From Perkinsela sp. CCAP 1560/9 (taxonomy: Eukaryota; Protista; Euglenozoa: Kinetoplastea): 64,000 nt of DNA. The notes beneath the pieces are model-generated. The model was not told the origin of the DNA and did no database searches. It saw only the letters and a list, made by a program, of their open reading frames with translations. Position numbers and translations under genes: made by a program. Below are positions 2,339 through 36,473 of the stretch, in pieces; the stretch's first letter is position 1, and every line of letters begins with the position of its first letter. Location of the stretch: the NCBI GenBank assembly GCA_965644495.1, contig CBFFSA010000015.1:186001-250000 (forward strand), read 5' to 3'.

Positions 2339-2410
2339 GTATCATACAGGTAATCCTGCAGAGATTTATGTGGTGAAAACGCGCACTGAACGCGTTTTAG
2401 TCACCTGTTT

Positions 2411-5400
2411 CTATCCAGCGTCACCAAGAACGTTCTCCTCCATCCAATTTTTGCCATTGCGGTTTTGATATACTATGAAGCTCCCTCTCAGAGCCTTCAC
2501 GGTCATATTGCGCCGGCACTCAGCCACCAGCTCATCATTACCCACAAATAGAGAGTTCAGAGTTCGACCAGCACTGCTTATTTTTCCTCTCGCTCCGACT
2601 TCGAAAACGAGTAGGAAAGTGCTCGGGTTTGTGAGCTTGCGGGAATGGTAGAGATTTGTGTACTTGGCAGTTTTTCGTTCGTGTGCGTAGACAAAATTTT
2701 CCTCCCAGGGGCACGTCAATTCTATAATATACTCCTCCCCGTTGGACAGTTTCACCCACCCATCCGGTCGCAGCTCGGTGTCGAGTTCCGTGAGCCACGG
2801 AGGGGTAGAGCGAAAGTGAGGGAGGTCAAAGTGATATAGACTGGTCCCTTGGAATTTCTGCACAGAGTTTGCGAGGGCTTGTAGCACCATGTTATGTCGC
2901 AGAGTATATCGTCCTTGCTCGAGTGCTTTTCTACACCCGGAGAGAATATGTCGCGCGGTTTGCGTTTCAGTATCGCAGATGGGACACTTGTCGCTTGTGT
3001 GTGTCGATACGCCCCATTTGCGGAGAGACACTCTAGTAGGGAGTGGCGTTTCTGTGAGTACGGAAGCCGTAAATCGTGATAGCGATTCGCTTTTGAGATT
3101 ACATAGGGCGGCAGCGAAGTCCCTCGCGAGGTCTGCTTCCGTCGCTAAGCGGAACCATCTTCCCGCAACTGAAGTGCGCCTTTGCACGGCTTCCGAAAGA
3201 TGCCTCTCATATTCACTGTCGATAAGTCGTCGTACGTTATTGTGAGTTGAACCGAGTATGTCAGTCGGCGGACGAATGTACCCCGCTTTTCTCTTGTTTT
3301 CTTCTCTCCTGATGCGTTCTCGCAGGGCGTGCTGGACATCGGGATCGCGTGATTTCTCCATTTGTTCCACGGCGCTCGCGGTTGAAAGAAGCCATAGTTT
3401 GGATAAGCTCACGAGGTTCCAACCATGCTCGGAGTACAACAGTTCGCTTGTCGCGGATTTTGCTACATTTAACCATTTTCTGATTTCATTTGTAGCGCAT
3501 CGCTGGAGGCGCAGAACGTGGTTAAAAGTCAGACATGAATTGACAACAAAAGAGTAGCGAAGGCGGGAGATAAGGCGGGAGATACCATTATTGTATATCC
3601 AGAGTCGGGCGGGTAGGTCGTGGGCGCTGGAAGATACATGTATGTTGCGTAACCAGGTACGGAGTCGATTGCGTAGCTTTGGGAACAGAATTTTACCATA
3701 CTGGGCACCAGGTGCGAGAGTCATACCCAGGAATGTGCTACCATTATCGCATATTTGAGGAATAGGTGTTGCGTCAATCATTATCTGCGGTCGTCTTGTC
3801 ATGTAGCCTGAGTCTTGAGTCATTGCCATGTGTTGAATCCGACATTTCTTTGCGTTCAATTTCATTCCGATGCCGCCTAGAACTTTGACCAGTACGTTCG
3901 TGGCAATTTGCATTTCCTTTGGTGTGTTCGTGAGTATACTGAGGTCGTCAGCAAAGGCCTTCAGAGAGGTTTCCTTTCCATCCCAAGTGATTCCGTACTG
4001 TGGGCAACTTGAACGGATGAAGCGAAGAACCAATTCCATTGCCAAGTTGAATAAGATCGGCGACAGTGTATCTCCTTGTAATACTCCACGGCCGATCTCG
4101 AGCGACTTCGTAAGGCCTTCAGCACACTTGATTTGAATAGATGCTCCTTTATACAGCGCGCTGATATAGTTAATTAGAATTGGGGAGACACTGGCCCATT
4201 TTAGGGATTGTAACAGTACTGCGTGGGGGATAGATCCGAAAGCGTTCTTGATATCGAATTGTGCCAGTAAGTATTGCCGTTTGTGACGTCGTTGGTGTTC
4301 AAGGAGCTCGCATAAGACTTGTGTATGCTCGACGGTCCCATTCATGTGTGGTAGAAATCCTTTTTGTACTGATGTATCGAGCGCATGAGAATCCAAGGAA
4401 TGTTGAAGGATTCGGTGGCTCAGGATTGAATGGAAAAGTTTCCCTATGCAACTAGTTAAGCTTATCGGTCGCCAATTCTCCATAGTTGATGTAGGACCTC
4501 CTTTGTGTATGAGGCGAGTTACGGCAGATTTCCAGGTGGGGGGACAAACCCCGAATTTAAGGATGTCATTGAATACTTGAGCGATGTGGACAAAGATAGG
4601 GCTACAACGCTTGAGCAGAGCGTTGGATACAGTGTCTGATCCAGGAGCAGCGCCCGAGCGCTTGGAAGATACAGCAGATGCTATCATTTCGGCGTCAATA
4701 TCCGACCATGGTATGTCGATGTCAGGCCGTGGTCCCAAGAACTCGGCGGGGGGTATGCTGTGATTCTCTTCAGGTTTTGACAATGATGCCGCGAAGAAGT
4801 TCTCAACCTCTTGAAGAGGTACTGTAGGGTAAGACGTCTCGGGTTCCTGGATTGGGTCAGTGCGATCTAGGCATTCGCCCGCAGCTGTCCACGGGTTTCT
4901 CTGGAACCGAGTTAATGCCCATCGTCGATCGATTTCCCTCTTCTGTAGATTGGCTTCCTCCACGTACAACTTCAACGCTTTCTCTGCTTCCTTAATTTCT
5001 CCTCGCTGCTTGTTTCTCGCGACCCCCTTCATGAAGGTAAGTGCACGTTTGAGTTGACGAACATGTGTGCGAAGCCTCTTCGTGGTACGTTCGATGGCCA
5101 AGGGCCGCCAAGGGGGGATATTGCCATCTCTACTAACATGAGGTTCCGGGGAAGTGCGTGTATGAGAGAGTTCGTGGTTTACAGCCTGCGTACCGCTCAA
5201 GTTTCCTGTCTCGGATGGCCAGCTAGGGTGATACTGTGGTGATATTATGCTAGCATCGGCAGGAGATGTCCTCGTAAACAAATTCCTGAGTGACCATATT
5301 CGATTCTGACTGTTTTCTTCGACGATCATGACCCCTGTCTTGCAACATTGGTGTTTGCACTGAGTTTTATTGCTGCATATGTGCCGACACGGGCGACAGT

Positions 5401-6460
5401 TGGCCGTGTTTGCTGATATGGCGGACGACGGCGGATGACCGGTTGGCAGTTCCTCATACTGGGCCTCTTCGCTCGGTATGGCATCTGTCGAGACTTGCGG
5501 ATCGGTTTCTATCGATGTGGCTACTGTCGGTGGACTATGTGACCGTGTTAATGGTGACTCCCCGAGGTGCCGTTCTGGTCGAGGATTATCTGTAGCACCC
5601 GTGATGAGGACTCCTATTTTGCAGCACTGGTGCAAACAATTTGTCTTGTCGCGGCACGTATGCTTACAGGGCCTTCTGCCGGGAGCTAGTGAACTGTCTA
5701 TAGCCACGGCTTCCGAAGAGGGAAGAGGGACGCTAGGATGCACAGACCTTTCGGGTTTCACTTTGCAACATACGTGAAGACATGCTGCTTTGTCCCGGCA
5801 TTTATGGGCACAAGGGACACTTGGTTTAGTGGGCGGTAGTTTTGACACCTTGACGGGAGCATCACGGATTCTATATGGCGCGTCGTATGTGACCTCCGGG
5901 CAACGTTGGAGTTGTTCAACGGGTTGGGCCTTACGGGTCACGTGTGATATGCGGAATCGTCGTAAGCCTGGCACGTCACCGCCGCGCAATTTCTTTGTGA
6001 CGGCTTTGCCAAGCGCGTTCGAGGAGGAGTATTCTGTGTCAAGATGCATGTCGGAGTCTGTATAAGCAGAGCTCCAGCTCGTGTGATGAAATGTGCCACT
6101 AAGGTTTCCAATTTCATGGTACTCAACGTACTCGCATGCGTCGTTCTCGATGACATCTTGAGTGGTACACGTTTGTACTATCAGACCATCGCTCCTTTTG
6201 CTTCCCGACTTCAGGGTTTTTCCGAGGGAAGCTTCTGCTGTGTGCGTGCTTGAGAAAAACTCTCGTTCGGTAAGGGTGATGGCTGCGGCGTGCGTGTCGG
6301 GAAAATAGGACCACGAAACGCTATCAGAGGGGCGGATCTTCACTGGCAGCGCACGACTTCGGACGAAGTGAAAGTTCTGGGGGTGTCGCTGCGCGCTGAC
6401 AGGTCCTCGAGGGAGGCCGTCGTGCGCGTGGGGAGCTGGGGGTGTGACATTCGAGACCAT
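2411..6460 (-). CDS. 1349-aa retrotransposon protein: three Cys/His modules, reverse transcriptase, CCHC knuckle, restriction-like endonuclease
   Basis: NWRPISL, QKGF, DIKNAFGS, GVLQGDTLSP, FADD, CPIC..HILSGC, RHN, RPD, IIELTCPWEEN..K..KY; ORF uninterrupted. Confidence 0.95.
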   Translation of the reverse strand: MVSNVTPPAPHAHDGLPRGPVSAQRHPQNFHFVRSRALPVKIRPSDSVSWSYFPDTHAAAITLTEREFFSSTHTAEASLGKTLKSGSKRSDGLIVQTCTTQDVIENDACEYVEYHEIGNLSGTFHHTSWSSAYTDSDMHLDTEYSSSNALGKAVTKKLRGGDVPGLRRFRISHVTRKAQPVEQLQRCPEVTYDAPYRIRDAPVKVSKLPPTKPSVPCAHKCRDKAACLHVCCKVKPERSVHPSVPLPSSEAVAIDSSLAPGRRPCKHTCRDKTNCLHQCCKIGVLITGATDNPRPERHLGESPLTRSHSPPTVATSIETDPQVSTDAIPSEEAQYEELPTGHPPSSAISANTANCRPCRHICSNKTQCKHQCCKTGVMIVEENSQNRIWSLRNLFTRTSPADASIISPQYHPSWPSETGNLSGTQAVNHELSHTRTSPEPHVSRDGNIPPWRPLAIERTTKRLRTHVRQLKRALTFMKGVARNKQRGEIKEAEKALKLYVEEANLQKREIDRRWALTRFQRNPWTAAGECLDRTDPIQEPETSYPTVPLQEVENFFAASLSKPEENHSIPPAEFLGPRPDIDIPWSDIDAEMIASAVSSKRSGAAPGSDTVSNALLKRCSPIFVHIAQVFNDILKFGVCPPTWKSAVTRLIHKGGPTSTMENWRPISLTSCIGKLFHSILSHRILQHSLDSHALDTSVQKGFLPHMNGTVEHTQVLCELLEHQRRHKRQYLLAQFDIKNAFGSIPHAVLLQSLKWASVSPILINYISALYKGASIQIKCAEGLTKSLEIGRGVLQGDTLSPILFNLAMELVLRFIRSSCPQYGITWDGKETSLKAFADDLSILTNTPKEMQIATNVLVKVLGGIGMKLNAKKCRIQHMAMTQDSGYMTRRPQIMIDATPIPQICDNGSTFLGMTLAPGAQYGKILFPKLRNRLRTWLRNIHVSSSAHDLPARLWIYNNGISRLISRLRYSFVVNSCLTFNHVLRLQRCATNEIRKWLNVAKSATSELLYSEHGWNLVSLSKLWLLSTASAVEQMEKSRDPDVQHALRERIRREENKRKAGYIRPPTDILGSTHNNVRRLIDSEYERHLSEAVQRRTSVAGRWFRLATEADLARDFAAALCNLKSESLSRFTASVLTETPLPTRVSLRKWGVSTHTSDKCPICDTETQTARHILSGCRKALEQGRYTLRHNMVLQALANSVQKFQGTSLYHFDLPHFRSTPPWLTELDTELRPDGWVKLSNGEEYIIELTCPWEENFVYAHERKTAKYTNLYHSRKLTNPSTFLLVFEVGARGKISSAGRTLNSLFVGNDELVAECRRNMTVKALRGSFIVYQNRNGKNWMEENVLGDAG

Positions 6461-6496
6461 GCTCCGAAAGATAAGTTTAGTACAAAGTTAATAAAT

Positions 6497-6524
6497 CAAC
6501 AAGGTACAGAAACTGTATCTTTAT
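6497..6524 (-). other. Spliced-leader exon sequence (3' 28 nt) at the LINE 5' end, not followed by GT
   Basis: ATAAAGATACAGTTTCTGTACCTTGTTG contains the kinetoplastid SL core ACAGTTTCTGTAC..TTG; lies 36 nt before the ORF ATG. Confidence 0.85.
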
Positions 6525-6590
6525 GTAAGTTAGACTTTCTGGGAGATGGCAGAGATCTACAGTTCGCACAAACTGATTGTCAAAAATATA
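6525..6590 (-). pseudogene. Internal LRR gene fragment between two LINE insertions
   Basis: Translates YIFDNQFVRTVDLCHLPESLTY, one LRR unit that joins YMKCNKLSG at ~2338. Confidence 0.75.
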
Positions 6591-6591
6591 T

Positions 6592-7192
6592 TAATCATGC
6601 AGTTATACTGCAGAGATTAGCCCTAGGTAGGTAAGCACGCCCAAAACGTGCTACTTACTCGGGGATTACCACTTTATTGGAAGCCTTGCACCTCCCACGT
6701 GGGGTTGTCGCGGTGCTGGTAGATAACAAAGCTTCCCCGGAGTGCCCGCTGGACCATTCTCTCCCTGCACTCGGAGGCAAGGCTCTTGCATCCTCCGAAG
6801 AGAGAGTTCAGCGCGCGGGTTGTGGCGTTTAACTTTCCTCTTGCCCGAACTTCAAAAACCAGGTGGAAGGTGGAAGGGTTTTTTAATTTCCTCTGGTTAT
6901 AGATGTGAGAGTATTTACGAATCTTACGCTCGTGTGCGTCCGTGAAGTTTTCTTCCCAAGGGGAAGTCAGCTCAATGATGTATTCCGACCCGTTGTGCAA
7001 CTTCACCCACCCGTCTGGTCTCAATTCAGTTTGTTGCGAGAGCCAGGCGGGAGGGTTCCTGTGGAGGTACAGGTCGAAGTGCGAATGGGCCGCTGATGGT
7101 GATGCTGCTACGGTGTCCGCTAGTGTGAGCAGGATAAGGTCGTGTCGGTAAGTGAATCGTCCCTGACTGAGCGCAATTGGGCACCCAAAAAG
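6592..7192 (-). mobile_element. 5'-truncated copy of a related LINE (RLE domain plus 3' UTR; LINE copy 3)
   Basis: GCPIALSQGRFTYRHD, RPDGWVKL, IIELTSPWEEN; same 3' UTR structure as copies 1 and 2. Confidence 0.88.
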
Positions 7193-7337
7193 TTAGCCTA
7201 TGGTCACTTATCGTGACGGGGGGTTTATATACACTTACACTTATAATTTATATACACATATTTGCTACTTTCGCTTATAAGGTCAGTAAAAAAACCTTTC
7301 GAATGTCTCGATTTTTTTTCTTTTGTATACAGCCATT

Positions 7338-7836
7338 CACGTTGTTTATCATGCGCTCTTTGGCGCAGAGATAATCCCCTTAATGCGACGGCCGATATCA
7401 TCGGCACATAATCCGCCCACAACGGATGTCGCCAAAGGGGGTTCGACACGGACTCGGTCGGTAGAGGTGGTCCAGGCAACTCACCACCTCTTTACGCAGC
7501 CGGAGGGGCGCACTGCAACCGACCGCTGCCTCGCGATAATGCGAGGCAGAGTCACGCCCAGTGGTCCTCAAGGGAGGCCACCATGGCGCATAGCTCCCGG
7601 GAAGAGACAGGCGCGAGAAGAAGAAAGCCGGGGAGGGAAGAAAACTCACTCAAGGAGTGAGCCGGGGAGGGGTGAAAAGTCGGAAGTACGTCCCCTACTT
7701 CCACGACAAGAGGGACAGTCCCTGCTAGCCGTCAGCCGGAAACGGGCATTTAAAAGGAAAATGTATGCCCGTTTCCGGGAAAAGAAAGGAAGGGCTAGCA
7801 AAATGTACCAACAAGGTACAGAAACTGTATCTTTAT
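7338..7836 (-). mobile_element. SL-RNA-headed, highly structured non-autonomous retroelement (candidate SINE)
   Basis: Interrupts one Tc1 TIR while the other TIR gives the empty site; SL 28-mer plus GT at the 5' end; LINE-type 3' structure at 7348-7441. Confidence 0.8.
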
Positions 7837-8057
7837 ATTAATTATCACTGTTGCGCTGGTAATGTGTGCTAGTAGTGTCGGCATGAGTGTCACCTAATAG
7901 TACCCATAGGTAGTTCACCTCAGTTCGTTCTGCCCAAGAATTAAGAATGAATTTAAAAAAAAAGCATTCGAAAGATTTTTTTGCTACCTAACATAAATAA
8001 AATATAGCATCAAAAAAAAGATAAAAAAGAATTGCCCAAGAGAGTATATGCCCACAA

Positions 8058-8935
8058 ATTTAATACTTTGTATTCCCCCACGCGCCTTCAACACTGCCTT
8101 CATGCGGGCAGGCATGCTGTCCACCTGGGTACGACATACTGAGGCCGGTATGTTCGCCCACTCCTTCTTAACCCTCTCCCACAACTCTCGGACCCCACTT
8201 GGCGGATCATCGTGGTCCGCAAGGCGCCGCTTGAGCTCCCCCAAAACATTCTCGATGGGGTTTAAGTCAGGGGACTGCGGGGGCCACCGCATGACTTCAA
8301 ACCCGGTACCCTGGAGGTGCCGTTGCGCACACCGGCTGGTATGCTTGGGGTCGCTATCCTGTTGGGAGATAACTTTTCCAGGATCCAAGCCCATGCCATC
8401 AATTGATGGGACAAAATTTTCCTGTAAAATCTCGATGTACTGCTCTGCATTCAAGTTCCCTTGAACTAGACGCACATGTCTCACACCACTTCGGGACATA
8501 CACGCCCAAATCATTACATGACCCCCTCCATATTTGACCGTAGGGATCACCCCCTTTTCCCCCAGTTCCTCCCCTGGGGTCCCCCATGTCCATGACTCCC
8601 CCCCGTCTCAAAGCGCCAGATCTTGGTCTCGTCCGACCACACTACTGGCTCTCAATCATGGACTGTCCAGTGCTCATGGGCAGTAGCGTAGTCCATCCGA
8701 AGCTTTCTATGTCGCTTGGACAAGTACGGCTTTCGGACACGCTTCCTTCCCTTGTGTCCGAAGCGTTTCATCGAAACGCGGATGGATTGTGGGACGACAT
8801 CCACAACACCCTCCTGGCGGAGTTGAGAGGAAACCTCGCGCGCAGACTTACCCGAAAACACAAGTCGTCGCAGCGCGTCGTGCGCACGACTCGGAAATCT
8901 TGCGAGGGTGACCCCTCTTTAGCCTGCGAGTAGCA
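8058..8935 (-). pseudogene. Degenerate Tc1 (DD34E) transposase
   Basis: TVKYGGGHVMIWACM, QQDSDPKH, WPPQSPDLNPIEN; stops and frameshifts. Confidence 0.88.
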
Positions 8936-8993
8936 GGTCTTTCTGCCTTTAATACTTTAGAAACTGTAGATATGCTTAGATTTAAATTACCAG

Positions 8994-9214
8994 AAATCTA
9001 ACTCATCGAAAACCCGCTATCATAAAGCTCCGAAATGCGCGTTTGTAAGTACCGTGGTGTGGACCTCACACAGAGTGCAAAAATTAATCAAGAAAGTAAT
9101 AGTGTAAATTTAAATTAATCCAAAGTTTCTTCTTTTCTACGAGGCCCACGCCACGGTACTTACAAACGCGAATTTCGGAGCTTTATGATAGCGGGTTTTC
9201 GATGAGTTAGATTT
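8994..9214. repeat. Foldback: ~75-bp inverted repeat with ~72-bp spacer
   Basis: AAATCTAACTCATCGAAAACCCGCTATCATAAAGCTCCG... versus ...CGGAGCTTTATGATAGCGGGTTTTCGATGAGTTAGATTT. Confidence 0.8.
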
Positions 9215-9221
9215 TTTTTTG

Positions 9222-9690
9222 CTTTCGAAAATCGAGCGCAGGGAAGTGGTAGAGTATGCCGCAGCGATAATTTTCCACCCCCCCCCTGATACGCGCAGGA
9301 GGGGTCCGACAAGGTTAAAATTTCTGAAATTTTTGGGGCAACCAAAAATTTTTTTTTGTTTCAAAAAAAAGTAAAAATATTATTTTTCCAAAATCGACTC
9401 CTAAAACGTATTTGGAGAGTTTGGGACCTCAGCTACCATTCTACGACGTTTTTTCCGACAGATTCGACTCCTGCCCCTACTGGTAAAGCATCAAAAACGG
9501 CACAAAATCGGGTTAAATTTTCGCAAAAATCGAGCTTTTTCACCCAAAAAAATAGGTTATTCATGATCTTTTGGCAATTTTTCTTTTATGGGCTCTTCGT
9601 TAAACGCGGTGGTAGTTTTCAACGCAAAGCGCGCAGCATGAGTGACTTCTAAGTTGAAAATAACCGCCGCGTTTAACGAAGAGCCTAAAA
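9222..9690 (+). repeat. Repeat family A, partial copy (large terminal hairpin end)
   Basis: Near-identical to 39115-39592. Confidence 0.8.
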
Positions 9691-10309
9691 AAGAAATATC
9701 TATTTATGGGCATATATTCTCCCGGGCAATTCTTTTTTATCTTTTTTTGATGCAATATTTTATTAATGTTAGGTAGCAAAAAAACCTTTCGAATGCTATT
9801 TTTTTTTAAATTTATTCTTAATTCTTGGGCAGAACGAACTGAGGTGAACTATCTGTGGGTACTATTAGGTGACACTCATGCCTACACTACACTCATGCCT
9901 ACTAGCACACATTACCAGCGCAACAGTGATAATTAATCAATGGCTGTATACAAAAGAAAAAAAATTCGAAACATTCGAACGGTTTTTTTACTGACCTTAT
10001 ATACACTTATATTATTTACACTTATTTGAAGGGTTTTGCAATTTTTAGACCCCCCGCAGCATCTGATTTACCCCCCTGTATACACTTGTGTATACAGATA
10101 ATTATGTGTATATAAACCAGGGGGGTTTATAACCAGGGGGGGTTACTTGAAAGACAATTACTGTTGGTGAAGTCTGTTGTATGCCGTCAGTTAACTGTGA
10201 ATACCGTCTATTGCACTTTACTGCACGTTTTTCGTAGCTTTGCTTTTTTTAGGCTGTCGACCTGGGGCAGAGCAAGTTTTTTCGACCACTGTCAGAAATT
10301 TTCTACTAC

Positions 10310-12497: not shown

Positions 12498-12572
12498 TGG
12501 AGCGCCGAGGACACCTTCTCCTGGATTGTCTTCCACGAGGGGTCTGCTTCCTTGCAGGGTCGACGCGTGATC

Positions 12573-25788: not shown

Positions 25789-27837
25789 CTAGCTGTCATT
25801 CGCCGCACCTGATGACTTGACACGACTTGGTGAATAAGTCGGATTGAGCACTTTGGTTGCGCGATCCGACATGTTCTTTCGACCCTTTTTCTTTGTTCCC
25901 TCCGTGGGATTGGATGACTCACTTCCGCTGCCGCTTTCCACGGTGCCAACACCTTCAGATATTCCTCTCTCGGCCCGTTTTTTGAAAGAATTCCCCCGAG
26001 GAGGGGACAACACATCGTGACTTACGTCGGCGGACCCTTTTACGGGTGTAGCGGAGGGCGTGGAGTTACTTGGCGTGTCTTTCGTGGGGGTCGTGGTCGA
26101 GTGCTGTTGCGGCATTGTATCAGAAGATGGGGCCGCACGTTTCGGGCTAACAAGTTCAGGTGAAAGATTACCCTCCTTTGCGACCTCCCGCTTCTGTTGC
26201 TCTGCCTCTCCAGCAGGTGTGGATTCCGGTGCCAGATTAGCCGTCGGAGGAGTGATAGTTGCGGTGGAGGGCCCCGTTGGGGTAGTCGTGGGAGTATTAG
26301 TTGCGGGCGTCGTAGGGTTGCTGCCGGAGACGTTTGCTGTGCTCTGCCGCGTCCTAGTCGGACGCAGGGGCCCGTTCACATACGCCTCCTGCATAAGTGA
26401 GGCTATATCAGGTCGATTAGTGGGATTCGGGTCCAGACACTTTCGGATAAACTCCTTTGCATCGGCACTCACCACTGGGCGCACGGGAAAATCCACCTCC
26501 CGAGCTTTACTCATGACTCCACCCGTCCATATTTGTTTCTGGGACATTCCCTCACCAAATGGGCGTTTCCCGAACAACATTTGATAGAATACCACGCCCA
26601 GGGCCCAGACATCCACCTTGGTGGAAATCCGGGGAAGCGACGTGGTGTTGAAGCACTCCGGTGGGAGATACCAATAAGTCCCTGTACCCTGGGAGGTGAG
26701 ATCTATTTCATCTCGCCCACTTTCCTCACCTATAATTTTACATAATCCAAAGTCAGTGATTTTAATATCCAAACAGTTCGGGAGATCCGTCGCGAACAGG
26801 ATGTTCGCAGGTTTTAGGTCATAGTGGATAATACGCTCTTTGTGATCCGCCAAGTAGCGCAACCCGTGGAGGAGTTGAATCAAAATGTATTTGGCATCCA
26901 CCTCCCGGAGGTTACCCCACTTCTTAAGATGTGTGTCAAGGTCGGGACCGGAGCTGTACTCCATGGCACTGATAAACGCATTGTCGTCAAGGACCTCCAC
27001 GTCGTGAAGCTGTATCACTCGAGGGTGCTCGAGCTGCATGTGCACCTCACACTCGCGCTTGGCGTGACGGATGTAATTCCGACGACGGTCTTCGGACCAA
27101 TCTGTACTCACTTGGTGAAACTTCACTGCCACTGGGCTGCACCTTACAATGTCGTACGCCTTCCACACCTCACTGAACCCTCCGCGGCCCAGAAGAGACA
27201 TCATCACATAGCGATCTAACAAAACTTCTAGGGTGGCGTACTTGCTGCGGTCCTCGTCATAAATCCTGCGCATCTCCTTGAGCAGCACCAGCTTGTCGCG
27301 CTCCAGCTCCTCCAGCTTGTCCTTTAGCACGACGTCCTCCCTCCGAGAGGCACTACCACTCTCCCCTCGGTACTGCTTGAACAGGCGATTTTGAGCCACT
27401 GCATCCTTGTATCGCTGTCCCCAGACCCAGGTTTCGCCGCTCTCGTTTGATACTGTGGGTTGCAATATCATATACCCCACGGAGTACTGCGCATCGCACA
27501 GCTTCCTTCGAGCCAAGCTGCGCTCATGGCGAGCTGCTGTGACCATCGTGTCCCGGATTCGAGCCCGGCACTCGCTGGCGTGTTCCTCAGAGGCCTCATA
27601 CATGGAACGGAGCTGAGAGAGGGCCGAGGTGGCCTCCTGGAGCTGTTGTTGTAGTCGCGCGGCTTGGTCTGTGCGAGAAGCTAACTCCTTTCGTAGAACA
27701 TCGTCGGAAGTAGAGAAGGATAATACACTCTGTTTCAGCTTCTTCAAAGGCTTGCTTTCGTTGCTCCCCTCATCCAGTGAAGAAATGCCGGCGATGGGCG
27801 GTGGGGGAAGATAGGTGGCATTACTGTCATCTTCCAT
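25789..27837 (-). CDS. TLK: Tousled-like Ser/Thr kinase
   Basis: Coiled coil, LLGRGGFSEVWKAYD, NYIRHAKRE, IIHYDLKPANIL, ITDFGL, LTSQGTGTYWYLPPECF, KVDVW. Confidence 0.93.
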   Translation of the reverse strand: MEDDSNATYLPPPPIAGISSLDEGSNESKPLKKLKQSVLSFSTSDDVLRKELASRTDQAARLQQQLQEATSALSQLRSMYEASEEHASECRARIRDTMVTAARHERSLARRKLCDAQYSVGYMILQPTVSNESGETWVWGQRYKDAVAQNRLFKQYRGESGSASRREDVVLKDKLEELERDKLVLLKEMRRIYDEDRSKYATLEVLLDRYVMMSLLGRGGFSEVWKAYDIVRCSPVAVKFHQVSTDWSEDRRRNYIRHAKRECEVHMQLEHPRVIQLHDVEVLDDNAFISAMEYSSGPDLDTHLKKWGNLREVDAKYILIQLLHGLRYLADHKERIIHYDLKPANILFATDLPNCLDIKITDFGLCKIIGEESGRDEIDLTSQGTGTYWYLPPECFNTTSLPRISTKVDVWALGVVFYQMLFGKRPFGEGMSQKQIWTGGVMSKAREVDFPVRPVVSADAKEFIRKCLDPNPTNRPDIASLMQEAYVNGPLRPTRTRQSTANVSGSNPTTPATNTPTTTPTGPSTATITPPTANLAPESTPAGEAEQQKREVAKEGNLSPELVSPKRAAPSSDTMPQQHSTTTPTKDTPSNSTPSATPVKGSADVSHDVLSPPRGNSFKKRAERGISEGVGTVESGSGSESSNPTEGTKKKGRKNMSDRATKVLNPTYSPSRVKSSGAANDS

Positions 27838-29574: not shown

Positions 29575-29575
29575 C
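29279..29575 (-). pseudogene. 5'-truncated duplicate of the coiled-coil gene at 51226-52002
   Basis: Only the last 98 codons are present; homology stops at ~29575. Confidence 0.85.
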
Positions 29576-29687
29576 TTCTTGACTCTTACCAGAGCTCGAT
29601 CCTTCGCCTTGTCGTGGCGCTCTGGCTTACCATCCTAAAGGGTAAACCAAGAAAGGATTAAAAGAATTTAAAAATTGGAGTGACACT

Positions 29688-31066
29688 AAATTAGTGTTCG
29701 GAGTGACTGACAAGTGAGATTGCAAGGACGAATGCAAGATTGGAAAGAATGCATAGATTGAGAGAATACGATTGTAAAGAGTGGAGACTGTGCAGCTAAC
29801 CGGTGCCATCTCGTGCCGTCTTGTGCCAATTCATGCCAACCAGAACTGGGAATAATGAGACTTTTTTTAGGGATACAGAAATCACATGCATTTTTTCATA
29901 CCCTGTACCTCAATGCCCCCTCCACGGAATAATTAGGCCTTGGTGACATCGCGCGGGCCCTCACTATTTCATTTTCTTAATAAGTACGTAAGTAATGAGT
30001 GCTCATAGTTGTAACGATCTTTTGCTGCTACGTAACGCTCTTATCAACTTCTAAGAAACGGGGTAAACTATATATATATATATATACATGTATATACATG
30101 TATATACTCAAATGTATTTCATCATAACTTGCTAAAGGACTAACGAAGGGGACGTCCGCAACCGCCCCATTCGCCAGTCTCCTTCGAGGACAGTTCAATG
30201 CCACCAAGATGACAAGCTTCATTTCGGGAGTCATGCGAGGCAACCCAGGGCAAAGTGGACGAGGGAGATACCAATAGTTTAGCTGCGGCAGTTTCTAAAG
30301 GAAAAACGACATCTCTACCGTTTTAGGCGCTTGCCTTCATGCCATAAGGGAGATACCGTTTTTCCTTTGGAAACTGCCGCACCTAAACTATTGGTATCTC
30401 CCTCGTCCACTTTGCCCTGGGTTACATAGGAAAAACATGTTAGTAAAATGTTAGTAGTAAAATGTTAAAATTAGTGTTCGGAGTGACTGACAAGTGAGAT
30501 TGCAAGGACGAATGCAAGATTGGAAAGAATGCATAGATTGAGAGAATACGATTGTAAAGAGTGGAGACTGTGCAGCTAACCGGTGCCATCTCGTGCCGTC
30601 TTGTGCCAATTCATGCCAACTCATGCCAATTCGTGCCAACTCATGCCAACCAGAACTGGGAATAATGAGACTTTTTTTAGGGATACAGAAATCACATGCA
30701 TTTTTTCATACCCTGTACCTCAATGCCCCCTCCACGGAATAATTAGGCCTTGGTGACATCGCGCGGGCCCTCACTATTTCATTTTCTTAATAAGTACGTA
30801 AGTAATGAGTGCTCATAATTGTAACGATCTTTTGCTGCTACGTAACGCTCTTATCAACTTCTAAGAAACGGGGTAAACTATATATATATATACATGTATA
30901 TACATGTATATACTCAAATGTATTTCATCATAGCTTGCTAAAGGACTAACGAAGGGGACGTCCGCAACCGCCCCATTCGCCAGTCTCCTTCGAGGACAGT
31001 TCAATGCCACCAAGATGACAAGCTTCATTTCGGGAGTCATGCGAGGCAACCCAGGGCAAAGTGGAC
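29688..31066 (+). repeat. Local tandem duplication (~29688-30260 repeated at ~30467-31066) including the family F foldback at 30242-30423
   Basis: Near-identical sequence; differs in copy number of TGCCAA(C/T)TC(A/G) and TA units. Confidence 0.9.
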
Positions 31067-33484
31067 TTTGCCCAGCAGACTTATCCATAGACACCGATCA
31101 GCATACCACACCAGACATCGGACACTTCGAAGAGGTCAGGGATCCGGAGCTCCCGACCGTAAATCCGCCCTCACTAGGATACATGGATGACGCCACACAC
31201 CACACACAAACATCAACCAATGAAGTCAATTATCGCCCCTGTCGGCACATATGTAGCAACAAAGCTCAGTGCAAGCATCGATGTTGCAAAAATGGTGTCA
31301 TACAACCTAGCACGGAGGTTGTACTCCGCGAACCCGTCCGTACCTCTCCAGACCTGCACACCAGCAATGACAACACCCCTGCCCCAACAGCGCCTCGTCG
31401 CAACTGCGCTCATAAATGTAAGGACAAGGCAACATGTAAACATCAATGCTGCCAGAAAGGAGTTCTCCTCAAAGTCGCTGAAGTAGCGTACTCTGCCATA
31501 TGCTGGACCACGAGAAATATACTGTGCCCTGCAATGGGTGATGCGGAACGCGCCGCAAAAGCTTCACTACCGCCCCCTCCACGCGCAACAACCTACCCCC
31601 CAGTTCACACCAACCCCTCGAATCGCTCGAGTCCAATACTGAGCCCTGTGCGGAATGCACCACTTGTCCACGCCCCGCAACATGATTCCCCTTCTGTACG
31701 CCGCTCCTCACCTTCTTTACCCCTTGTGCAGTCCGCAACAGATCCCACGCCTCTGCCCTTACCTTTACCTCCCCCACCAGAAGGAAACTGCGAACACACG
31801 ATATTGCAGCGCATCCCTCGTGTCCGGCAAGTCCCGGCTACCCGACCTCTCCCTGAACTGCAGAATCTACTCGAAACATTCCGCACAATAAATGGAGGTC
31901 GCGTTCTAGTCCGTTTCACAGAGGAACAGTGGGAGAGTATTATTGCGAAGATCGAGGAACGCTGCAACTCGTATATCCACCTGGCGCGAAACAAAGAGGA
32001 CGCCCTGTCGCAAGCTGAAATACTCTCAGCAATCCTCGCTGTAACTGCATTCGAGGCCGCACGGGAAAACGATCCGACGCACGGCTTTCTTATACGGACC
32101 AGAACTGGCAGAGCCCGAAGAAACTCACGACCCTTAGCCATTGAACGCACAGTGAAAGTACTCAGTCAACACGTTCGACAACTTAAACGTGCGCTAACGT
32201 TCATGAAGGGTCCTGCGTGAAACAAGCAACGAGGGGAAATAAAGGAAGCCGAAAAGGCACTAAAGCAGTACATGGAAGAATCCAGTATGCAGAGGAAAGA
32301 AATCGATCGACGGTGGGCTCTTACGCGATTCCAGCGAAATCCCTGGACAGCCGCGGGCGAATGCTTAGATCGCGTCGACCCATCTACCTCAGAAACTGAG
32401 ACGTCCTACCCTACAGTTCCTGTACAGGAGGTTGAAAGATTCTTTGTGGGCTCAATGTCTAGACCAGAAGAGATACACAAGATTCCTCCCGCAGAATTTA
32501 CGAAACCAATTCCCCTTGATGAGATGCAATGGTCAGATATTGACTCAGACATGATCGCAGCAGCCGTCGCATCCAAACGCTCTGGGGCTGCCCCAGGCTC
32601 GGACACTGTATCGAACGCGCTGCTAAAGCGCTGCGCCCCTGTCTTTACTCACATGGCACAGGTGTTTAATGATGTCCTAAAATTTGGTGTATGCCCTCCA
32701 ACCTGGAAAACTGCGGTCACTCGACTTATCCACAAAGGGGGCCCCACCTCAAGTATGGAAAACTGGCGGCCGATAAGCTTGACTAGCTGCATTGGGAAGC
32801 TTTTCCACTCAATCCTCAGTCACCGTATCCTTCAGCATTCCCTGGATTCCAATGCCCTGGACACAACAATACAAAAAGGCTTCTTGCCGCATATGAATGG
32901 GACAGTTGAGCACACCCAGGTCCTTTGCGAGCTCCTCGAGCACCAGCGGCGCCACAAAAGGCAATACGTGCTTGCCCAGTTTGATATCAAAAACGCGTTT
33001 GGATCCATACCCCATACAATTTTATTTCAGGCCTTAAAATGGGCGCGCGTCTCACCGATCCTCATTAACTACATCAAAGCGCTGTACGAACGAGCGTCTA
33101 TGCAAATTAAATGTGCAGAAGGACTCACGAAGTCTATTGAGATAGGCCGTGGCGTTTTGCAGGGAGATACGCTTTCGCCTATTTTATTCAACTTGGCGAT
33201 GGAGCTAGTTCTGCGTTTTGTCCGTTCAAGTTGCCCCGAATACGGGATCACGTGGAATGCGAAAGAATTTTTTCTAAAAGCCTTCGCAGATGACCTCACT
33301 ATTCTGACAAATACCCCCCAGGAAATGCAGAATGCTACAAACGCACTCGTCAAAGTTCTAAGCGATATTGGGATGAAACTAAACGTGAAAAAATGCCGGC
33401 TGCAACACATGGCGATGACGCAAGACTCTGGATATATGACACGCCGACCACAGATCATGATCGGCACGTCACCTATCCCACATA

Positions 33485-35044
33485 CAGGGGTGAAAACCTC
33501 GTGGTGGGGGGGGTCTAAAATTCGTAAAAATTATCCAATTTTGGAAAGTAATAGCGCATTCGAGAGCTCTCACAGAGTTGTATGTTTTAGCACTATTTGC
33601 GGCCTGTGACTCAACATGAAACGATGAGACAAAAAAAATCATGATTTTTTTTCTTGCCCAAATTTACGTTTTTTCAGTTTTTAGCTGTTTTTCAGTCAAT
33701 ATTAGCACTATATGCCCCAGAAACGGATTCGTTCCCGAACCTCACGTGGTGTACTCAGCGACAGGTCCTATTCCTCCCCCGCACGGGTGATACCAAGTCA
33801 CCGTATGCTTCTTGTCTCAGATTATCTTGAGACAGGGTCCTATTCTCGGACAGCCCAAAACTTCGGCGTCCACGAAAATACAGTAAAATGTCTTGTGATA
33901 CGCTATGAGAACACTGGAGACGTGGAAAGCTCTCCTATTTCACGCCCATCTCCTGTCAGTACCCCTGCGCTGCACGAAGCAGCTATCCGCCTCATTGATG
34001 AGGGATACCGTGACCTCCCGTACGGGATTGAGAACTGGTGTGCACTCCATAGAGTTGTGCTTTCTCTTGGATTTCAGTGTTCAAGACCAACTTTGGTTAA
34101 CGCCATGAAGAGCCATGGTATGATCATGCAAACTTTAAAAAGAAAGCCCGCACTGACCGATGAACACAAGAGGAAACGAGTGCATTTTTGTTCTGAGATG
34201 CTCACTTGGTCAGATACCCAACTGAGACAAATTGTTTTCTGCGATGAGAAGAAGTTCACTTGCGGTAGGGGACGAAACAAAATTACTTACCTTTGCCGGA
34301 AGACTGACCCCGCCAAGGAACAGCAGGGAGAGCTAGAACCTTGGTATGGAGGGAACGGCGTCATGGTGTGGATGGGGGTCAGTTTAAATCATGGATTTCA
34401 TCTACACATTTTTCCCTCCCACGACCCTTCCGGCCGAAAAGTAACTGTAACAGGGGATGTTTTCAATGACGCCATGAAGAAGCGCAAAGGACTTTTAAAT
34501 TATTTGAGGCGCCACCCATCTGGGGTCGTTGCAATGAATAATTGTCCTGTTCATAATTCTGCGCGAACAACCTTTCGCAACGAAGGTATTAATGTACTCT
34601 CTTGGCCTGCAAAATCCCCCGATTTAAACACCATTGAAAACCTTTGGGGGACCATGGACAGGATCAAAAATGATCTTCGACCCAAGAATCGGGCTGAATT
34701 AGTATCGGCCATTGAGACAGCGTTCGAAAGATTACAATCAGAACGCAAGCAAGAATGTATTAACACGATGAGCAGTTTCCGCAAGCGTTGTCGCATCGTT
34801 ATTGAGCGAAACGGGTCTTCCTGTGGGTATTAAGGGTAATTTTTGACCATTTTTTACAGTTTTTCAAATTTGCAAATCGTGTTTTTGACCCTTCCATCAA
34901 AGGGGGGTACCCCCCTAACCCCCGCAAACTGCCTATCTTAAAACATACAACTCTGCGAGAGCTCTCGAACGCGCTATTATTTTCCAAAATTGGACAAATT
35001 TTACGAATTTTAGACCCCCCCCCACCATGGGATTTTCACCCCTG
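33485..35044 (+). mobile_element. Tc1/mariner transposon with ~105-bp TIRs and TA TSD
   Basis: CAGGGGTGAAAA...TTTTCACCCCTG; removing it restores the LINE frame IPHICDNCSTFLGM. Confidence 0.93.
33712..34833 (+). CDS. Tc1/mariner transposase (second catalytic D is N; probably inactive)
   Basis: HTH, IVFCDEKKF, AMNNCPVH, WPAKSPDLNTIENLW. Confidence 0.88.
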   Translation: MPQKRIRSRTSRGVLSDRSYSSPARVIPSHRMLLVSDYLETGSYSRTAQNFGVHENTVKCLVIRYENTGDVESSPISRPSPVSTPALHEAAIRLIDEGYRDLPYGIENWCALHRVVLSLGFQCSRPTLVNAMKSHGMIMQTLKRKPALTDEHKRKRVHFCSEMLTWSDTQLRQIVFCDEKKFTCGRGRNKITYLCRKTDPAKEQQGELEPWYGGNGVMVWMGVSLNHGFHLHIFPSHDPSGRKVTVTGDVFNDAMKKRKGLLNYLRRHPSGVVAMNNCPVHNSARTTFRNEGINVLSWPAKSPDLNTIENLWGTMDRIKNDLRPKNRAELVSAIETAFERLQSERKQECINTMSSFRKRCRIVIERNGSSCGY

Positions 35045-36473
35045 TATATGTGATAATTGTAGCACATTTTTAGGCATGACGCTCGCACCCGGTGCTCAAC
35101 AAGGCAAGACACTCTTTCTAAAACTACGAACCCGTCTGCGAGCCTGGTTGCGTAATATATCTTCCAGCGCACATGACCTTCCCGCCCGCCTGTGGATATA
35201 CAATAACGGCATCATCTCTCGTCTGCGGTATTCCTTCGTCGTGAACTCATGCCTTACCTTCAATCACGTACTTCGTCTACAGCGATGCGCCACACGCGAA
35301 ATTCGGAAATGGTTAAACGTAGCGAAATCAGCAACTAGTGAGCTGCTCTATTCAGAGCATGGCTGGAATCTCATGAGTCTGTCAAAACTTTGGCTTCTTT
35401 CCACTGTGGGGACAATGGAACAAATGGATAAATCGCGTGATCCCGAGGTCCAGCACGCTTTACGTGAGCGCATCAGGCGAGAAGCGAACAAAAGGAGAGC
35501 AGGATACATTCGCCCGCCGACGGATATGCACAGTACAAGCCATAGTAACGTCCGAAGACTCCTTGGAAGCGAATACGAACGACACCTCACGGAAGCCGTC
35601 CAACGGCGTACTGCCGTAGCAGGACGATGGTTCAGAATCGCAACGGAAGCAGACCTTGCGAGAGACTCCGCCGCCGCCCTATGCAACCTCAAGAGTGAAT
35701 CGCTTTCGCGGTTCACATCCTCAGTGCTTACCGAGACGCCGCTCCCAACCAGGGCATCTCTTCGTAGGTGGGGCGTATCGACACATGCGAGCGATAAATG
35801 TCCCATCTGTGACACCGAGACACAAACTACGCGGCATATTCTATCTGGTTGTAGGAAGTCACTCGAACAAGGGAGGTATACCCTACGGCATAACATGGTA
35901 CTACAGGCATTAGCGAACTCCGTACAACGATTCTCCTCCACTAGTCAATGTCACTTCGATCTCCCCCACTTCCGCTCCACCCCCGCGTGGCTCACGAACC
36001 TTGATACTGAGCTACGTCCTGACGGATGGGTGAAACTATCTAACGGAGAAGAATACATTATAGAACTTACCTGCCCTTGGGAGGAGAACTTTGAGTTCGC
36101 ACACGAGCGCAAAATAGAAAAGTACACGAGTTTATATCACTCTAGAAAACTCGACCATCCTAACACATTCCTACTCGTCTTCGAGGTGGGAGCGAGAGGC
36201 AAACTGCATATGTCGGCCCGAACGCTCAACTCTCTCTTCATGGGAAATGAAGAAGCGGTTGCAGTGTGTCGCCGAAATATGACGACTAGCGCTCTCCGGG
36301 GAAGTTTCATAATTTTCCAGCACCGCGAGAACAAACAGTGGATGGAGGTTAGTTCTGGGGAGTGAGTCGCTGACTGTCAGGTGATTTCAACGCGTTTTGT
36401 GCGCGTAATATGGAACTCCCATATTCACCGTCTAATCTCTGTAGAATATTTTCTACATGATAACATACGAGGC

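What the first reader, a model, noticed from the sequence alone, without database searches (positions are those of the whole stretch)
2341..36461. Two-part 3' RNA structure with compensatory changes shared by three LINEs and the SINE
Seen, in element sense. The terminal motif is ATCTC-stem-TGAT. Copy 1 (2341-2366) has TGCAGG atta CCTGTA; copy 3 (6594-6618) has TGCAG tataa CTGCA; copy 2 (36434-36461) has TGTAGAA tatt TTCTACA; the SINE (7348-7373) has TGCGC caaaga GCGCA. Upstream, each has a hairpin with a 7-nt loop CG-TTNNGKG-CG: AACGCG ttcagtg CGCGTT, GCACG ttttggg CGTGC, ACGCG ttttgtg CGCGT and ATCCG ttgtggg CGGAT respectively. Stem sequences differ but pairing is kept, and there is no poly(A) tail. 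Inference: this is the cis signal recognised by the RT for target-primed reverse transcription, and the minimal cargo tag of the system.
Basis: partly seen in the sequence, partly recalled or inferred. Interest (0 to 1): 0.88.

Follow-up and report, generated by a model that had tools for sequence, protein, structure and literature searches.

The report
Shared 3' RNA tag of retrotransposons
Several families of R2-like jumping genes and their short non-coding hitch-hikers in this kinetoplastid-type genome all end in the same small folded RNA module, whose stems change sequence but keep pairing; it is most likely the handle by which the reverse transcriptase picks its template, a known principle seen here in a new group.

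Summary
All four 3' ends lie at the stated coordinates: 4 pattern matches in the window against 0.26 expected by chance.

The module is genome-wide. About 300 copies in 21 Mb fall into about 20 families, at least ten of them LINEs with a restriction-like endonuclease (RLE) and four of them SINE-like.

Both hairpins covary. 97% of cells are paired, against 81% when shuffled and at most 60% when slid. Six of nine pairs show changes on both sides, and G.U pairs occur only on the sense strand.

I add three features:
- an enclosing helix, often with a second inner hairpin;
- a two-pair extension, TC with GA, that explains the invariant TGA;
- family-specific tails of 5-9 nt.

Three details need correcting:
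- Four families end in TGAA, not TGAT.
- The most abundant SINE family has a different 6-nt loop.
- One LINE family lacks the canonical upstream hairpin.

Best reading (0.7): this is the cis signal that the R2-like protein binds to start target-primed reverse transcription. It parallels the two-stem-loop 3' RNA core of Bombyx R2 and the eel and zebrafish L2 tails. Function is inferred, not shown.

The scan has met this LINE/SINE system before on other DNA of the same genome (s1-695551, s1-711449, s1-686816).

It is a new member of a known kind, of moderate interest.

The parts
2333..6524 (-). LINE copy 1 (family A), apparently full length. It has a 28-nt spliced-leader-like head (6497-6524), one intact ORF of 1349 aa (2411-6460) and a 3' UTR of about 78 nt.
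   Evidence: ORF. RVT_1 and zf-RVT. The best solved relatives are R2 proteins, aligned over residues 588-1296. CCHC knuckle and RPD..ELT..K..KY endonuclease motif read. Head.
2333..2405 (-). 3' module of copy 1. Upstream hairpin at 2372-2405 (GGTG/CACC around AAAACGCG-ttcagtg-CGCGTTTT). Terminal unit ATCTC-TGCAGG-atta-CCTGTA-TGAT at 2341-2365. Tail ACAATATA at 2333-2340.
   Evidence: Covariance-model score 65.5 bits.
6586..7192 (-). LINE copy 3 (family I), 5'-truncated. Only the endonuclease end of the ORF remains (residues about 1173-1339, 57% identical to copy 1).
   Evidence: blastx and blastn.
6586..6656 (-). 3' module of copy 3. Hairpin AGCACG-ttttggg-CGTGCT at 6634-6652. Terminal unit at 6594-6617. 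Tail TAATATAT at 6586-6593.
   Evidence: 61.8 bits.
7342..7836 (-). SINE-like non-coding element (family E). It has a 28-nt spliced-leader-like head (7809-7836) followed by GTAC... This copy is about 77 nt shorter than its relatives.
   Evidence: No protein match.
7342..7440 (-). 3' module of the SINE-like element.
- Enclosing helix: 7376-7389 with 7428-7440.
- Hairpin ATCCG-ttgtggg-CGGAT: 7411-7427.
- Second inner hairpin GCCGAT-gat-ATCGGC: 7391-7405.
- Terminal unit: 7348-7372.
- Tail AAACAA: 7342-7347.
   Evidence: (fold z = -2.7). 69.8 bits.
31015..36467 (+). LINE copy 2 (family F). The ORF is broken into pieces and interrupted by a Tc1/mariner-like transposase gene (33712-34833). The 5' limit was not determined.
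   Evidence: 84% identity to copy 1 over residues 901-1341.
36380..36467 (+). 3' module of copy 2.
- Enclosing helix: GGTGA 36380-36384 with TCACC 36425-36429.
- Hairpin ACGCG-ttttgtg-CGCGT: 36390-36406.
- Second inner hairpin: 36407-36425.
- Terminal unit: 36435-36461.
- Tail AACATA: 36462-36467.
   Evidence: (fold z = -3.5). 73.3 bits.

Best explanation
This is a structured RNA tag that makes up the last 70-100 nt of the transcripts of a group of R2-like LINEs, which carry a restriction-like endonuclease (RLE), and of the SINE-like elements that depend on them.

Anatomy, from 5' to 3':
- An enclosing helix (P1).
- Inside it, a hairpin (P2) closed by C-G and G-C pairs, usually with a 7-nt loop TYNNNKG, and often a second hairpin (P2').
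- A single-stranded hinge that ends in the invariant AT of ATCTC.
- A terminal hairpin (P3) of 5-7 variable pairs. Its base is extended by the invariant pairs U-A and C-G, formed by the TC of ATCTC and the GA of TGA, with one bulged U.
- A single-stranded tail of 5-9 nt that is specific to each family.

Proposed mechanism (inferred). The LINE protein binds the two hairpins and the invariant single-stranded bases. This sets the 3' tail in the reverse-transcriptase active site, and the protein then starts target-primed reverse transcription at the nicked target. Poly(A) is therefore never copied. Any RNA that ends in the tag is mobilised, including the non-coding partners and copies truncated to about 70 nt.

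Shown here: the module, its distribution, the covariation, its strand, and the R2-like nature of the protein.

Inferred: binding, positioning of the template, and which part of the module sets partner specificity.
For: 1. Enrichment. There are 4 matches in the window against 0.26 expected. In the genome there are 173 + 158 matches against 12 + 16 for the controls.

2. Distribution. The module ends at least ten LINE families (A, B, F, G, I, J, L, N, O, P) that are 42-84% identical in protein. It also ends four non-coding families (C, D, E, K).

3. Detection of unseen families. A model built from families A-I found families J, K, M, N and P, which were not in its seed, at 31-61 bits.

4. Covariation.
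- With 15 sequences, 96.5% of cells are paired and 6 of 10 pairs change on both sides.
- With 36 distinct rows, 96.9% are paired against 80.9% when shuffled (0 of 500 shuffles reach it) and at most 60% when slid. The covariation score is 0.51 against 0.22.
- Counts anchored on the invariant motifs need no alignment. P3 pair 2 is GC, GU or AU. Pair 3 is CG, UA or GC. Pair 4 is AU, GC or UA. Pair 5 is GC or CG. P2 pair 3 shows all four Watson-Crick types.
- RNAalifold recovers both helices on its own.

5. Strand. G.U pairs are frequent on the element-sense strand (13 of 36 rows at one pair). They would be A.C mismatches on the other strand, so the sense strand is the one that folds.

6. The SINE-like and LINE modules are not alignable outside the motifs. 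The shared structure is therefore maintained, not just inherited.

7. The 3' UTR of the intact LINE is about 78 nt and is essentially only the module.

8. A copy truncated to about 70 nt keeps exactly the module (L008).

9. In 4 of 70 ends the unit TGAW-plus-tail is tandemly duplicated, as expected if synthesis starts, and sometimes restarts, at the very end.

10. The protein is R2-like, with a CCHC knuckle and an RLE motif.

11. For Bombyx R2, a core of 5' hairpin, single-stranded hinge, 3'-terminal stem-loop and single-stranded tail is what the protein binds and uses to position the template (PMC11194090).

12. Stem-loops in shared LINE/SINE tails are required for mobilisation in eel and zebrafish L2 elements (PMC1636434, PMC4176376).
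Against: - No functional data. No RNA run that could show the 3' ends was available.
- The P2 loop motif is not obligatory. SINE family K is the most numerous group in the model search (about 45 hits at about 39 bits). It has the loop TCATTA, while its older relative K2 keeps TTGTGAG.
- LINE family O has a different upstream hairpin.
- The invariant bases ATCTC and TGA cannot show covariation, so their pairing is only predicted.
- P1 is significant only as a sum. The best-helix lengths total 155, against a shuffled mean of 115 and a shuffled maximum of 134. It is significant individually only in some families.
- Fold z-scores for single copies are modest (-0.1 to -3.5).
- A role in forming or protecting the RNA 3' end would predict the same conservation.
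Confidence: 0.7

Rival explanations
1. The module is mainly a signal for forming or stabilising the RNA 3' end. A terminal hairpin would define or protect a non-polyadenylated end. The reverse transcriptase would then simply start at whatever 3' end it finds.
For: The hairpin sits 9-13 nt from the element end. There is no poly(A) in the copies. Conservation in LINEs and SINE-like elements alike is also expected under this reading.
Against: It does not explain why two separate hairpins plus invariant single-stranded bases are kept, nor why the R2-like relatives are known to bind exactly such an arrangement. In kinetoplastids, mRNA ends are made by polyadenylation coupled to trans-splicing (established knowledge), so a hairpin-defined end would itself be unusual. 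The two roles are not exclusive.
Confidence: 0.15
2. The hairpins act as DNA rather than RNA. They could be a fold-back in the first-strand or second-strand DNA that primes second-strand synthesis, or a site for the endonuclease.
For: P3 is a near-palindrome at the very end of the element. G.T wobble pairs are also tolerated in DNA hairpins.
Against: The wobble pairs are strand-specific, falling on the sense strand only. This excludes the first-strand cDNA. Insertion flanks show no copy of the motif. No such mechanism is known for R2-like elements.
Confidence: 0.05
3. The module is shared only by descent. The SINE-like tails were copied from LINE tails, and the resemblance has no function.
For: SINE tails generally derive from LINE tails. 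Families E and K are clearly related to each other.
Against: 97% pairing is kept through at least 11 inferred double substitutions, while the spacers are unalignable. The slid controls keep relatedness and still fall to at most 60% pairing. Within families, single unpaired changes are seen in scattered copies, such as the A.C in L027. The differences that separate families are compensated.
Confidence: 0.04
4. The module is a small self-cleaving ribozyme that releases the element RNA from read-through transcripts.
For: Ribozymes are known at the ends of other non-LTR elements, for example HDV-like in R2 and L1Tc and twister variants in Schistosoma (papers listed).
Against: No Rfam family matched, at gathering score over the whole window or at E up to 1 over 6500-7900. 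The invariant bases do not form a known catalytic core.
Confidence: 0.03

Closest known systems
Bombyx mori R2 3' UTR RNA core (two stem-loops), recognised by the R2 protein
   Same: The protein is of the same type: reverse transcriptase, CCHC knuckle and restriction-like endonuclease. R2 proteins are the best solved matches. The RNA layout is the same: 5' hairpin, single-stranded hinge, 3'-terminal stem-loop and short single-stranded tail. Little primary sequence is conserved, and the stems tolerate compensatory change. A foreign RNA with the R2 3' tag is copied.
   Different: There is no sequence or Rfam similarity to R2 3' UTRs. The module here is shorter (70-100 nt). It has invariant ATCTC and TGA flanks on the terminal hairpin. 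The elements are dispersed rather than in 28S rDNA. The host is a kinetoplastid-type protist.
Eel UnaL2/UnaSINE1 and zebrafish ZfL2 ('stringent' LINE/SINE pairs with a shared 3' tail stem-loop)
   Same: The LINE and its non-coding partner share a conserved 3' stem-loop next to a short terminal tail. In those systems the stem-loop is required for mobilisation, and swapping it swaps specificity (PMC1636434, PMC4176376). Occasional duplication of the terminal unit recalls slippage on terminal repeats.
   Different: Those LINEs belong to the L2 clade and have an AP-type endonuclease. Here no AP endonuclease domain is found and an RLE is present. The structure here is two-part or three-way rather than a single stem-loop. 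The partners carry a spliced-leader-like head rather than a tRNA-like one.
CRE clade of kinetoplastids (SLACS, CZAR, CRE1, CRE2)
   Same: They have a single ORF with RT and RLE and live in kinetoplastid hosts. They are linked to the spliced leader: the 28-nt head carried here is the part of the leader that lies 3' of the position where, to my knowledge, CRE-clade elements insert. PMC12278014 states that they insert at one fixed position in spliced-leader genes.
   Different: CRE elements sit inside spliced-leader genes and end in poly(A). The copies here are dispersed, have varied flanks, lack poly(A) and carry a structured tag. Phylogenetic placement was not tested.
Trypanosomatid ingi/RIME and L1Tc/NARTc pairs, and SIDER
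   Same: These are also kinetoplastid LINEs with short non-autonomous partners.
   Different: Those pairs share a 5' signature of 77-79 nt (Pr77) and belong to the ingi clade, which has an AP endonuclease (abstracts of PMC8190864 and PMC2323293; PMC12278014). The element shared here is a covarying 3' structure, and the enzyme is of RLE type.

Membership tests
Stringent-type LINE/SINE pair with a shared 3' tail (UnaL2/ZfL2 kind) | The LINE and its non-autonomous partner end in the same 3' motif. | tested here: met
   ATCTC-stem-TGAW plus the upstream hairpin is present in at least ten LINE families and four non-coding families.
Stringent-type LINE/SINE pair with a shared 3' tail (UnaL2/ZfL2 kind) | The tail forms a conserved stem-loop. 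| tested here: met
   97% pairing, with 6 of 9 pairs changed on both sides. RNAalifold agrees.
Stringent-type LINE/SINE pair with a shared 3' tail (UnaL2/ZfL2 kind) | The stem-loop is required for retrotransposition and sets template specificity. | not testable with these tools
   This needs a retrotransposition or TPRT assay.
Stringent-type LINE/SINE pair with a shared 3' tail (UnaL2/ZfL2 kind) | The LINE belongs to the L2 clade and has an AP-type endonuclease. | tested here: not met
   No Exo_endo_phos domain was found even at E up to 5. An RLE motif and R2-like alignment are present. It works like these pairs but is not a member of their clade.
R2-type template recognition (two-stem-loop 3' RNA core) | The protein has an R2-like reverse transcriptase, a CCHC knuckle and a PD-(D/E)xK-type endonuclease. 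| tested here: met
   phmmer E = 1.8e-34 to an R2 protein over residues 588-1296. C-x2-C-x8-H-x4-C and RPD..ELT..K..KY were read.
R2-type template recognition (two-stem-loop 3' RNA core) | The RNA has a 5' hairpin, a single-stranded hinge, a 3'-terminal stem-loop and a single-stranded 3' tail. | tested here: met
   Predicted and covarying structure, compared with the description in PMC11194090.
R2-type template recognition (two-stem-loop 3' RNA core) | Site-specific insertion in 28S rDNA. | tested here: not met
   The copies are dispersed over many contigs and have unrelated flanks.
R2-type template recognition (two-stem-loop 3' RNA core) | Match to a described R2 or other RNA family model. 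| tested here: not met
   No Rfam match.
R2-type template recognition (two-stem-loop 3' RNA core) | The protein binds the 3' RNA directly. | not testable with these tools
   This needs EMSA, TPRT or a solved structure.
CRE clade (SLACS/CZAR/CRE1/CRE2) | Single ORF with RT and RLE. | tested here: met
CRE clade (SLACS/CZAR/CRE1/CRE2) | Insertion at one fixed position inside spliced-leader RNA genes. | tested here: not met
   The flanks of 21 SINE-like copies and of the LINE copies differ. Only a 28-nt leader piece travels with the element. 6 of 70 ends lie within 140 nt upstream of another such head.
CRE clade (SLACS/CZAR/CRE1/CRE2) | 3' poly(A) tail. | tested here: not met
   The tails are short and specific to each family. 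Only family G shows A-runs.
CRE clade (SLACS/CZAR/CRE1/CRE2) | The RT groups phylogenetically with CRE references. | not tested
   No reference CRE sequences were at hand. The named hits are R2 and NeSL-like proteins of animals.

The most novel reading that the evidence does not exclude
The module may be a modular address code that lets several orthogonal LINE/SINE partnerships coexist in one small genome. The invariant parts (ATCTC, TGA and the closing pairs) would position any template. The P2 loop class would select the partner.

Each SINE loop class has a LINE counterpart in the data:
- TCGTATG: SINE families C and D, and LINE family P.
- TTKTGGG: SINE family E, and LINE families I and N.
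- TC[AC]TTA: SINE family K, and LINE family L.
- TTNNGTG: LINE families A, B, F, G and J.

If so, the abundant K family arose by a loop switch that changed its driver.
Probability: 0.25. Interest if true: 0.65.

Novelty: new member of a known kind. Interest (0 to 1): 0.5.

Why it matters
Template choice by non-LTR retrotransposons is understood in detail for very few systems: Bombyx and avian R2, eel and zebrafish L2, and human L1.

Here one 21-Mb genome offers a natural mutagenesis series. About 20 families carry one architecture. Their stems have drifted by compensatory change while about 12 bases stayed fixed. One abundant SINE family has swapped its loop.

That makes the roles of stem, loop, hinge and tail directly testable for an R2-like enzyme from a distant eukaryote. 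R2-type 3' tags are also being used to direct cargo RNAs in genome-insertion tools (PMC10499050, PMC13586686). A 70-100 nt tag with clear rules would be of practical interest.

For kinetoplastid biology, it adds a type of LINE/SINE system that the papers I found do not describe. They list ingi, CRE, VIPER and TATE for trypanosomatids and Bodo saltans.

Tried and rejected
- Rfam found nothing, at gathering score over the whole window or at E up to 1 over 6500-7900. ARAGORN found no tRNA-like part.
- Searching the last 299 residues alone against solved structures gave only chance hits. The endonuclease motif was therefore read directly.
- The MAFFT alignment of 20 family representatives (A4) split the 3' strand of P2. 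I did not use it for P2. I used anchored counts and a model-based alignment instead.
- P1 and P2' could not be put into common alignment columns, and RNAalifold did not recover them. They rest on single-sequence folds and a helix-length test.
- A relative with about 30% protein identity, from another metagenome (L100), has no module and ends in an A-run. The tag is therefore lineage-specific, and no outgroup covariation could be obtained.
- The sequencing-run search found only DNA-type contig holders from one study and no RNA holder. I did not run read laying, because contigs cannot show RNA ends.
Variants seen only as strings, such as TGCAGG-tcttg-CCCTGCA, were not analysed with their upstream parts. 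Copy numbers per family are rough.
- A pseudoknot between the P2 loop and the hinge was looked for by eye and is not consistent across families.
- The alternative outer pairing AUC/GAU suggested by single folds was rejected. The TC/GA extension holds in the TGAA families too.
- A paper search for the leader sequence found nothing.
Full report
**Observation.**
The terminal unit ATCTC-stem-loop-stem-TGAT lies at 2341-2365 (-), 6594-6617 (-), 7348-7372 (-) and 36435-36461 (+). A hairpin closed by CG/CG with a 7-nt loop lies 10-38 nt upstream of each. The pattern ATCTCTG-N6-24-ATGAW occurs 4 times in the window, against 0.26 expected from shuffles. No other copy of the module is in the window.

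**What the elements are.**
- Copy 1 has an intact 1349-aa ORF (2411-6460, minus strand) with an RVT_1 domain and a zf-RVT motif. No AP-endonuclease domain is found, even at a lax threshold.
- Its best solved relatives are R2 proteins, aligned from residue 588 to 1296, beyond the RT proper.
- The C-terminus shows a C-x2-C-x8-H-x4-C knuckle and an RPD...ELT...K..KY motif, the restriction-like endonuclease (RLE) signature of R2-type elements.
- The closest proteins in the large database are unnamed ones from one ENA assembly. Named R2 and NeSL-like proteins of animals follow.
- Copy 2 belongs to a second family, about 84% identical in protein. It is broken by a Tc1-like transposase.
- Copy 3 belongs to a third family, 57% identical, and is truncated to its last 600 nt or so.
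- The SINE-like element (7342-7836) has no protein match.
- Earlier notes of the scan place the genome among kinetoplastids. The spliced-leader-like sequences I met fit that.

**Genome-wide distribution.**
- In the 21-Mb assembly the TGAT form of the terminal unit occurs 173 times, against 12 for a reversed control. A TGAA form occurs 158 times against 16.
- From the copies I could fetch, I distinguish about 20 families.
- Families A, B, F, G, I, J, L, N, O and P are LINEs. In the copies fetched from this genome, the end of the ORF lies 48-95 nt before ATCTC. They are 42-84% identical to copy 1. M is a degenerate LINE remnant, and H is of unknown type.
- Families C, D, E and K are non-coding elements of about 500-620 nt.
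- A covariance model built from families A-I found families J, K, M, N and P, which were not in its seed, at 31-61 bits.
- Two of the families (N, O) and a B-like copy come from a second assembly, ERZ24900291. That assembly seems to be the same or a very close organism.

**Covariation.**
- On a 15-sequence alignment, 96.5% of cells pair and 6 of 10 pairs have changes on both sides.
- On 36 distinct rows aligned to the model, 96.9% pair, against 80.9% after shuffling (0 of 500 shuffles reach it). With the partners slid, which keeps relatedness, at most 60% pair. The covariation score is 0.51 against 0.22.
- Both helices abut invariant bases, so I also counted pairs inward from those anchors without any alignment.
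- In the terminal hairpin, pair 1 is always U-A. Pair 2 is G-C, G.U or A-U. Pair 3 is C-G, U-A or G-C. Pair 4 is A-U, G-C or U-A. Pair 5 is G-C or C-G.
- In the upstream hairpin, the two pairs next to the loop are nearly fixed. The third shows all four Watson-Crick arrangements. The fourth shows C-G, U-A, A-U and U.G.
- This implies at least 11 independent double substitutions.
- RNAalifold, run on 11 families without my structure, returns the same two helices.
- G.U pairs are common, 13 of 36 rows at one position, and lie on the element-sense strand. On the other strand they would be A.C mismatches. The folded molecule is therefore the sense strand, that is, the RNA.

**Extended anatomy.**
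- Unconstrained folds of the last 120 nt or so show that the upstream hairpin is usually enclosed by a further helix. That helix is 9-14 bp long in families B, C, E2, G, J, K and N. In B, C, E, F, G, J, K, N and P it also encloses a second hairpin, giving a three-way junction.
- Summed over 20 families, the best enclosing helices total 155 bp, against a shuffled mean of 115 and a maximum of 134 in 1000 shuffles. Family by family, only the long ones stand out.
- RNAalifold also pairs the TC of ATCTC with the GA of TGA, leaving one bulged U. This would explain why TGA is invariant while the next base is T or A. It cannot be tested by covariation.
- After TGAW comes a tail of 5-9 nt that is constant within a family and differs between families: ACAATATA, AATAT, AACATA, AAACAA, AAAAC, CATAAC, TAATATAT and YATCAAAA.
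- The 3' UTR of the intact LINE is about 78 nt, so it is essentially nothing but this module.

**Exceptions.**
- Families J, K, M and P end in TGAA.
- SINE family K makes up about 45 of the hits scored. It keeps the stems of family E but has the 6-nt loop TCATTA. Its older relative K2 still has TTGTGAG.
- LINE family L has the loop TCCTTA.
- LINE family O has another upstream hairpin altogether, and an internal duplication of its 3' UTR.
- So the terminal unit is the universal part. The upstream hairpin is nearly universal, and its loop sequence is not obligatory.

**Signs that copying starts at this end.**
- A copy reduced to about 70 nt keeps just the module (L008).
- In 4 of 70 distinct ends the unit TGAW-plus-tail is tandemly repeated, twice convincingly (L072, L084).
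- No poly(A) follows, apart from A-runs in family G.

**Mechanism.**
The module is the cis signal by which the LINE protein selects and positions its template for target-primed reverse transcription, and the non-coding families exploit it.
- The strongest outside support is the Bombyx R2 work. There the protein binds a core made of a 5' hairpin, a single-stranded hinge, a 3'-terminal stem-loop and a single-stranded tail. Both stem-loops are needed for full affinity. The terminal stem-loop and the single-stranded parts set the start position, and stems tolerate compensatory change (PMC11194090).
- The same layout is found here, next to a homologous type of protein.
- The general principle of a 'stringent' LINE sharing a 3' stem-loop with its SINE is established for eel UnaL2 and zebrafish ZfL2 (PMC1636434, PMC4176376).
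- Binding, positioning and partner specificity are inferences here.

**Rivals.**
- A role in making or protecting a non-polyadenylated 3' end predicts much the same conservation and is not exclusive (0.15).
- A DNA-level role is disfavoured by the strand-specific wobble pairs (0.05).
- Mere common descent is disfavoured by the compensated differences between families and by the slid controls (0.04).
- A ribozyme is disfavoured by the lack of any Rfam match (0.03).

**Novelty.**
- The kind is known.
- I found no description of this module. Rfam holds nothing like it. The papers I could search list only ingi, CRE, VIPER and TATE for trypanosomatids and Bodo saltans, with CRE elements ending in poly(A) inside spliced-leader genes (PMC12278014).
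- The scan itself has already met this LINE/SINE system on other DNA of the same genome (s1-695551, s1-711449, s1-686816).
- What this report adds is the genome-wide family survey, the formal covariation counts for both hairpins, the enclosing helix and junction, the TC/GA extension, the tails, the exceptions and the parallel with the R2 core.

**Limits.**
- No RNA data exist for the organism in the runs on offer.
- No outgroup with the module was found.
- The clade of the LINEs within the RLE group was not determined.

Noticed in passing
window 6497-6524 (-) and 7809-7836 (-); loci L014, L019, L022, L027, L037, L039, L047: LINE copy 1 and the SINE-like elements all begin with the same 28 nt, ATAAAGATACAGTTTCTGTACCTTGTTG. 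This is the 3' part of a spliced leader. In the LINE it runs straight into the 5' UTR. In the SINE-like elements it is followed by GTAC..., as at a splice donor. The core of this sequence occurs 505 times in the genome, against 0 for the control. The 5' flanks vary. The cut point lies 28 nt from the leader's 3' end. To my knowledge that is where SLACS, CZAR and CRE elements insert in trypanosomatid leader genes, which suggests descent from a leader-specific element. Earlier notes s1-686816 and s1-695551 report the head.
   Followed up: partly
L017 (G000:C1:661319-661343 and 661616-661640, minus strand): Two likely genuine spliced-leader RNA genes lie about 300 bp apart. They read AACTTTAACG plus the 28-nt part, then GTATGAGAAGC... 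with stem-loops and a T-run. This intron differs from the GTACATTTTGC... segment of the SINE-like elements.
   Followed up: no
L027:1500-1560, L079:290-330, L076 (3' flank); window 7837-7850: Element 3' ends lie next to the 28-nt heads of other elements far more often than chance would give. 6 of 70 distinct ends have a head within 140 nt downstream, and 3 abut it directly. In L076 an 11-bp duplication, GAGAACTTTGA, flanks the insert and looks like the start of a leader. In the window, TGATAATTAAT sits directly before the SINE head. This hints at a surviving preference for the leader site. My sample of loci is not unbiased.
   Followed up: partly
L053-L056 (G000:C53:22231-38432): Four family-G LINE 3' ends are spaced exactly 5370-5371 bp apart, each followed by an A-run. 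This is a tandem array of a LINE, or of a repeat unit that contains one.
   Followed up: no
window 33712-34833 (+) and about 8060-8400 (-): There are two Tc1/mariner-like transposase genes. The first (DDE_3 and HTH_Tnp_Tc3_2) interrupts LINE copy 2. The second lies just upstream of the SINE-like element. Inverted A/T-rich repeats at about 7250-7330 and about 7960-8050 bracket the SINE.
   Followed up: no
window 30300-30420 and 36470-36600: LINE copy 2 is flanked by long inverted and direct repeats of one sequence (ggaaaaacg.catctctaccgttttaggcg...). It seems to sit inside a fold-back or TIR element. A similar 25-nt stretch also occurs at about 31040.
   Followed up: no
L101:6010-6240 (ENA ERZ24900291 ctg3877l): The family-O LINE has a 57-nt tandem duplication inside its 3' UTR. 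The first copy ends in ATCTC without the terminal hairpin. A long (TG)n run begins about 30 nt downstream of the element.
   Followed up: no
window 25789-27837 (-), 55662-57206 (-): These are ordinary intron-less host genes, a protein kinase and a PPR-repeat protein. They fit a compact protist genome.
   Followed up: no
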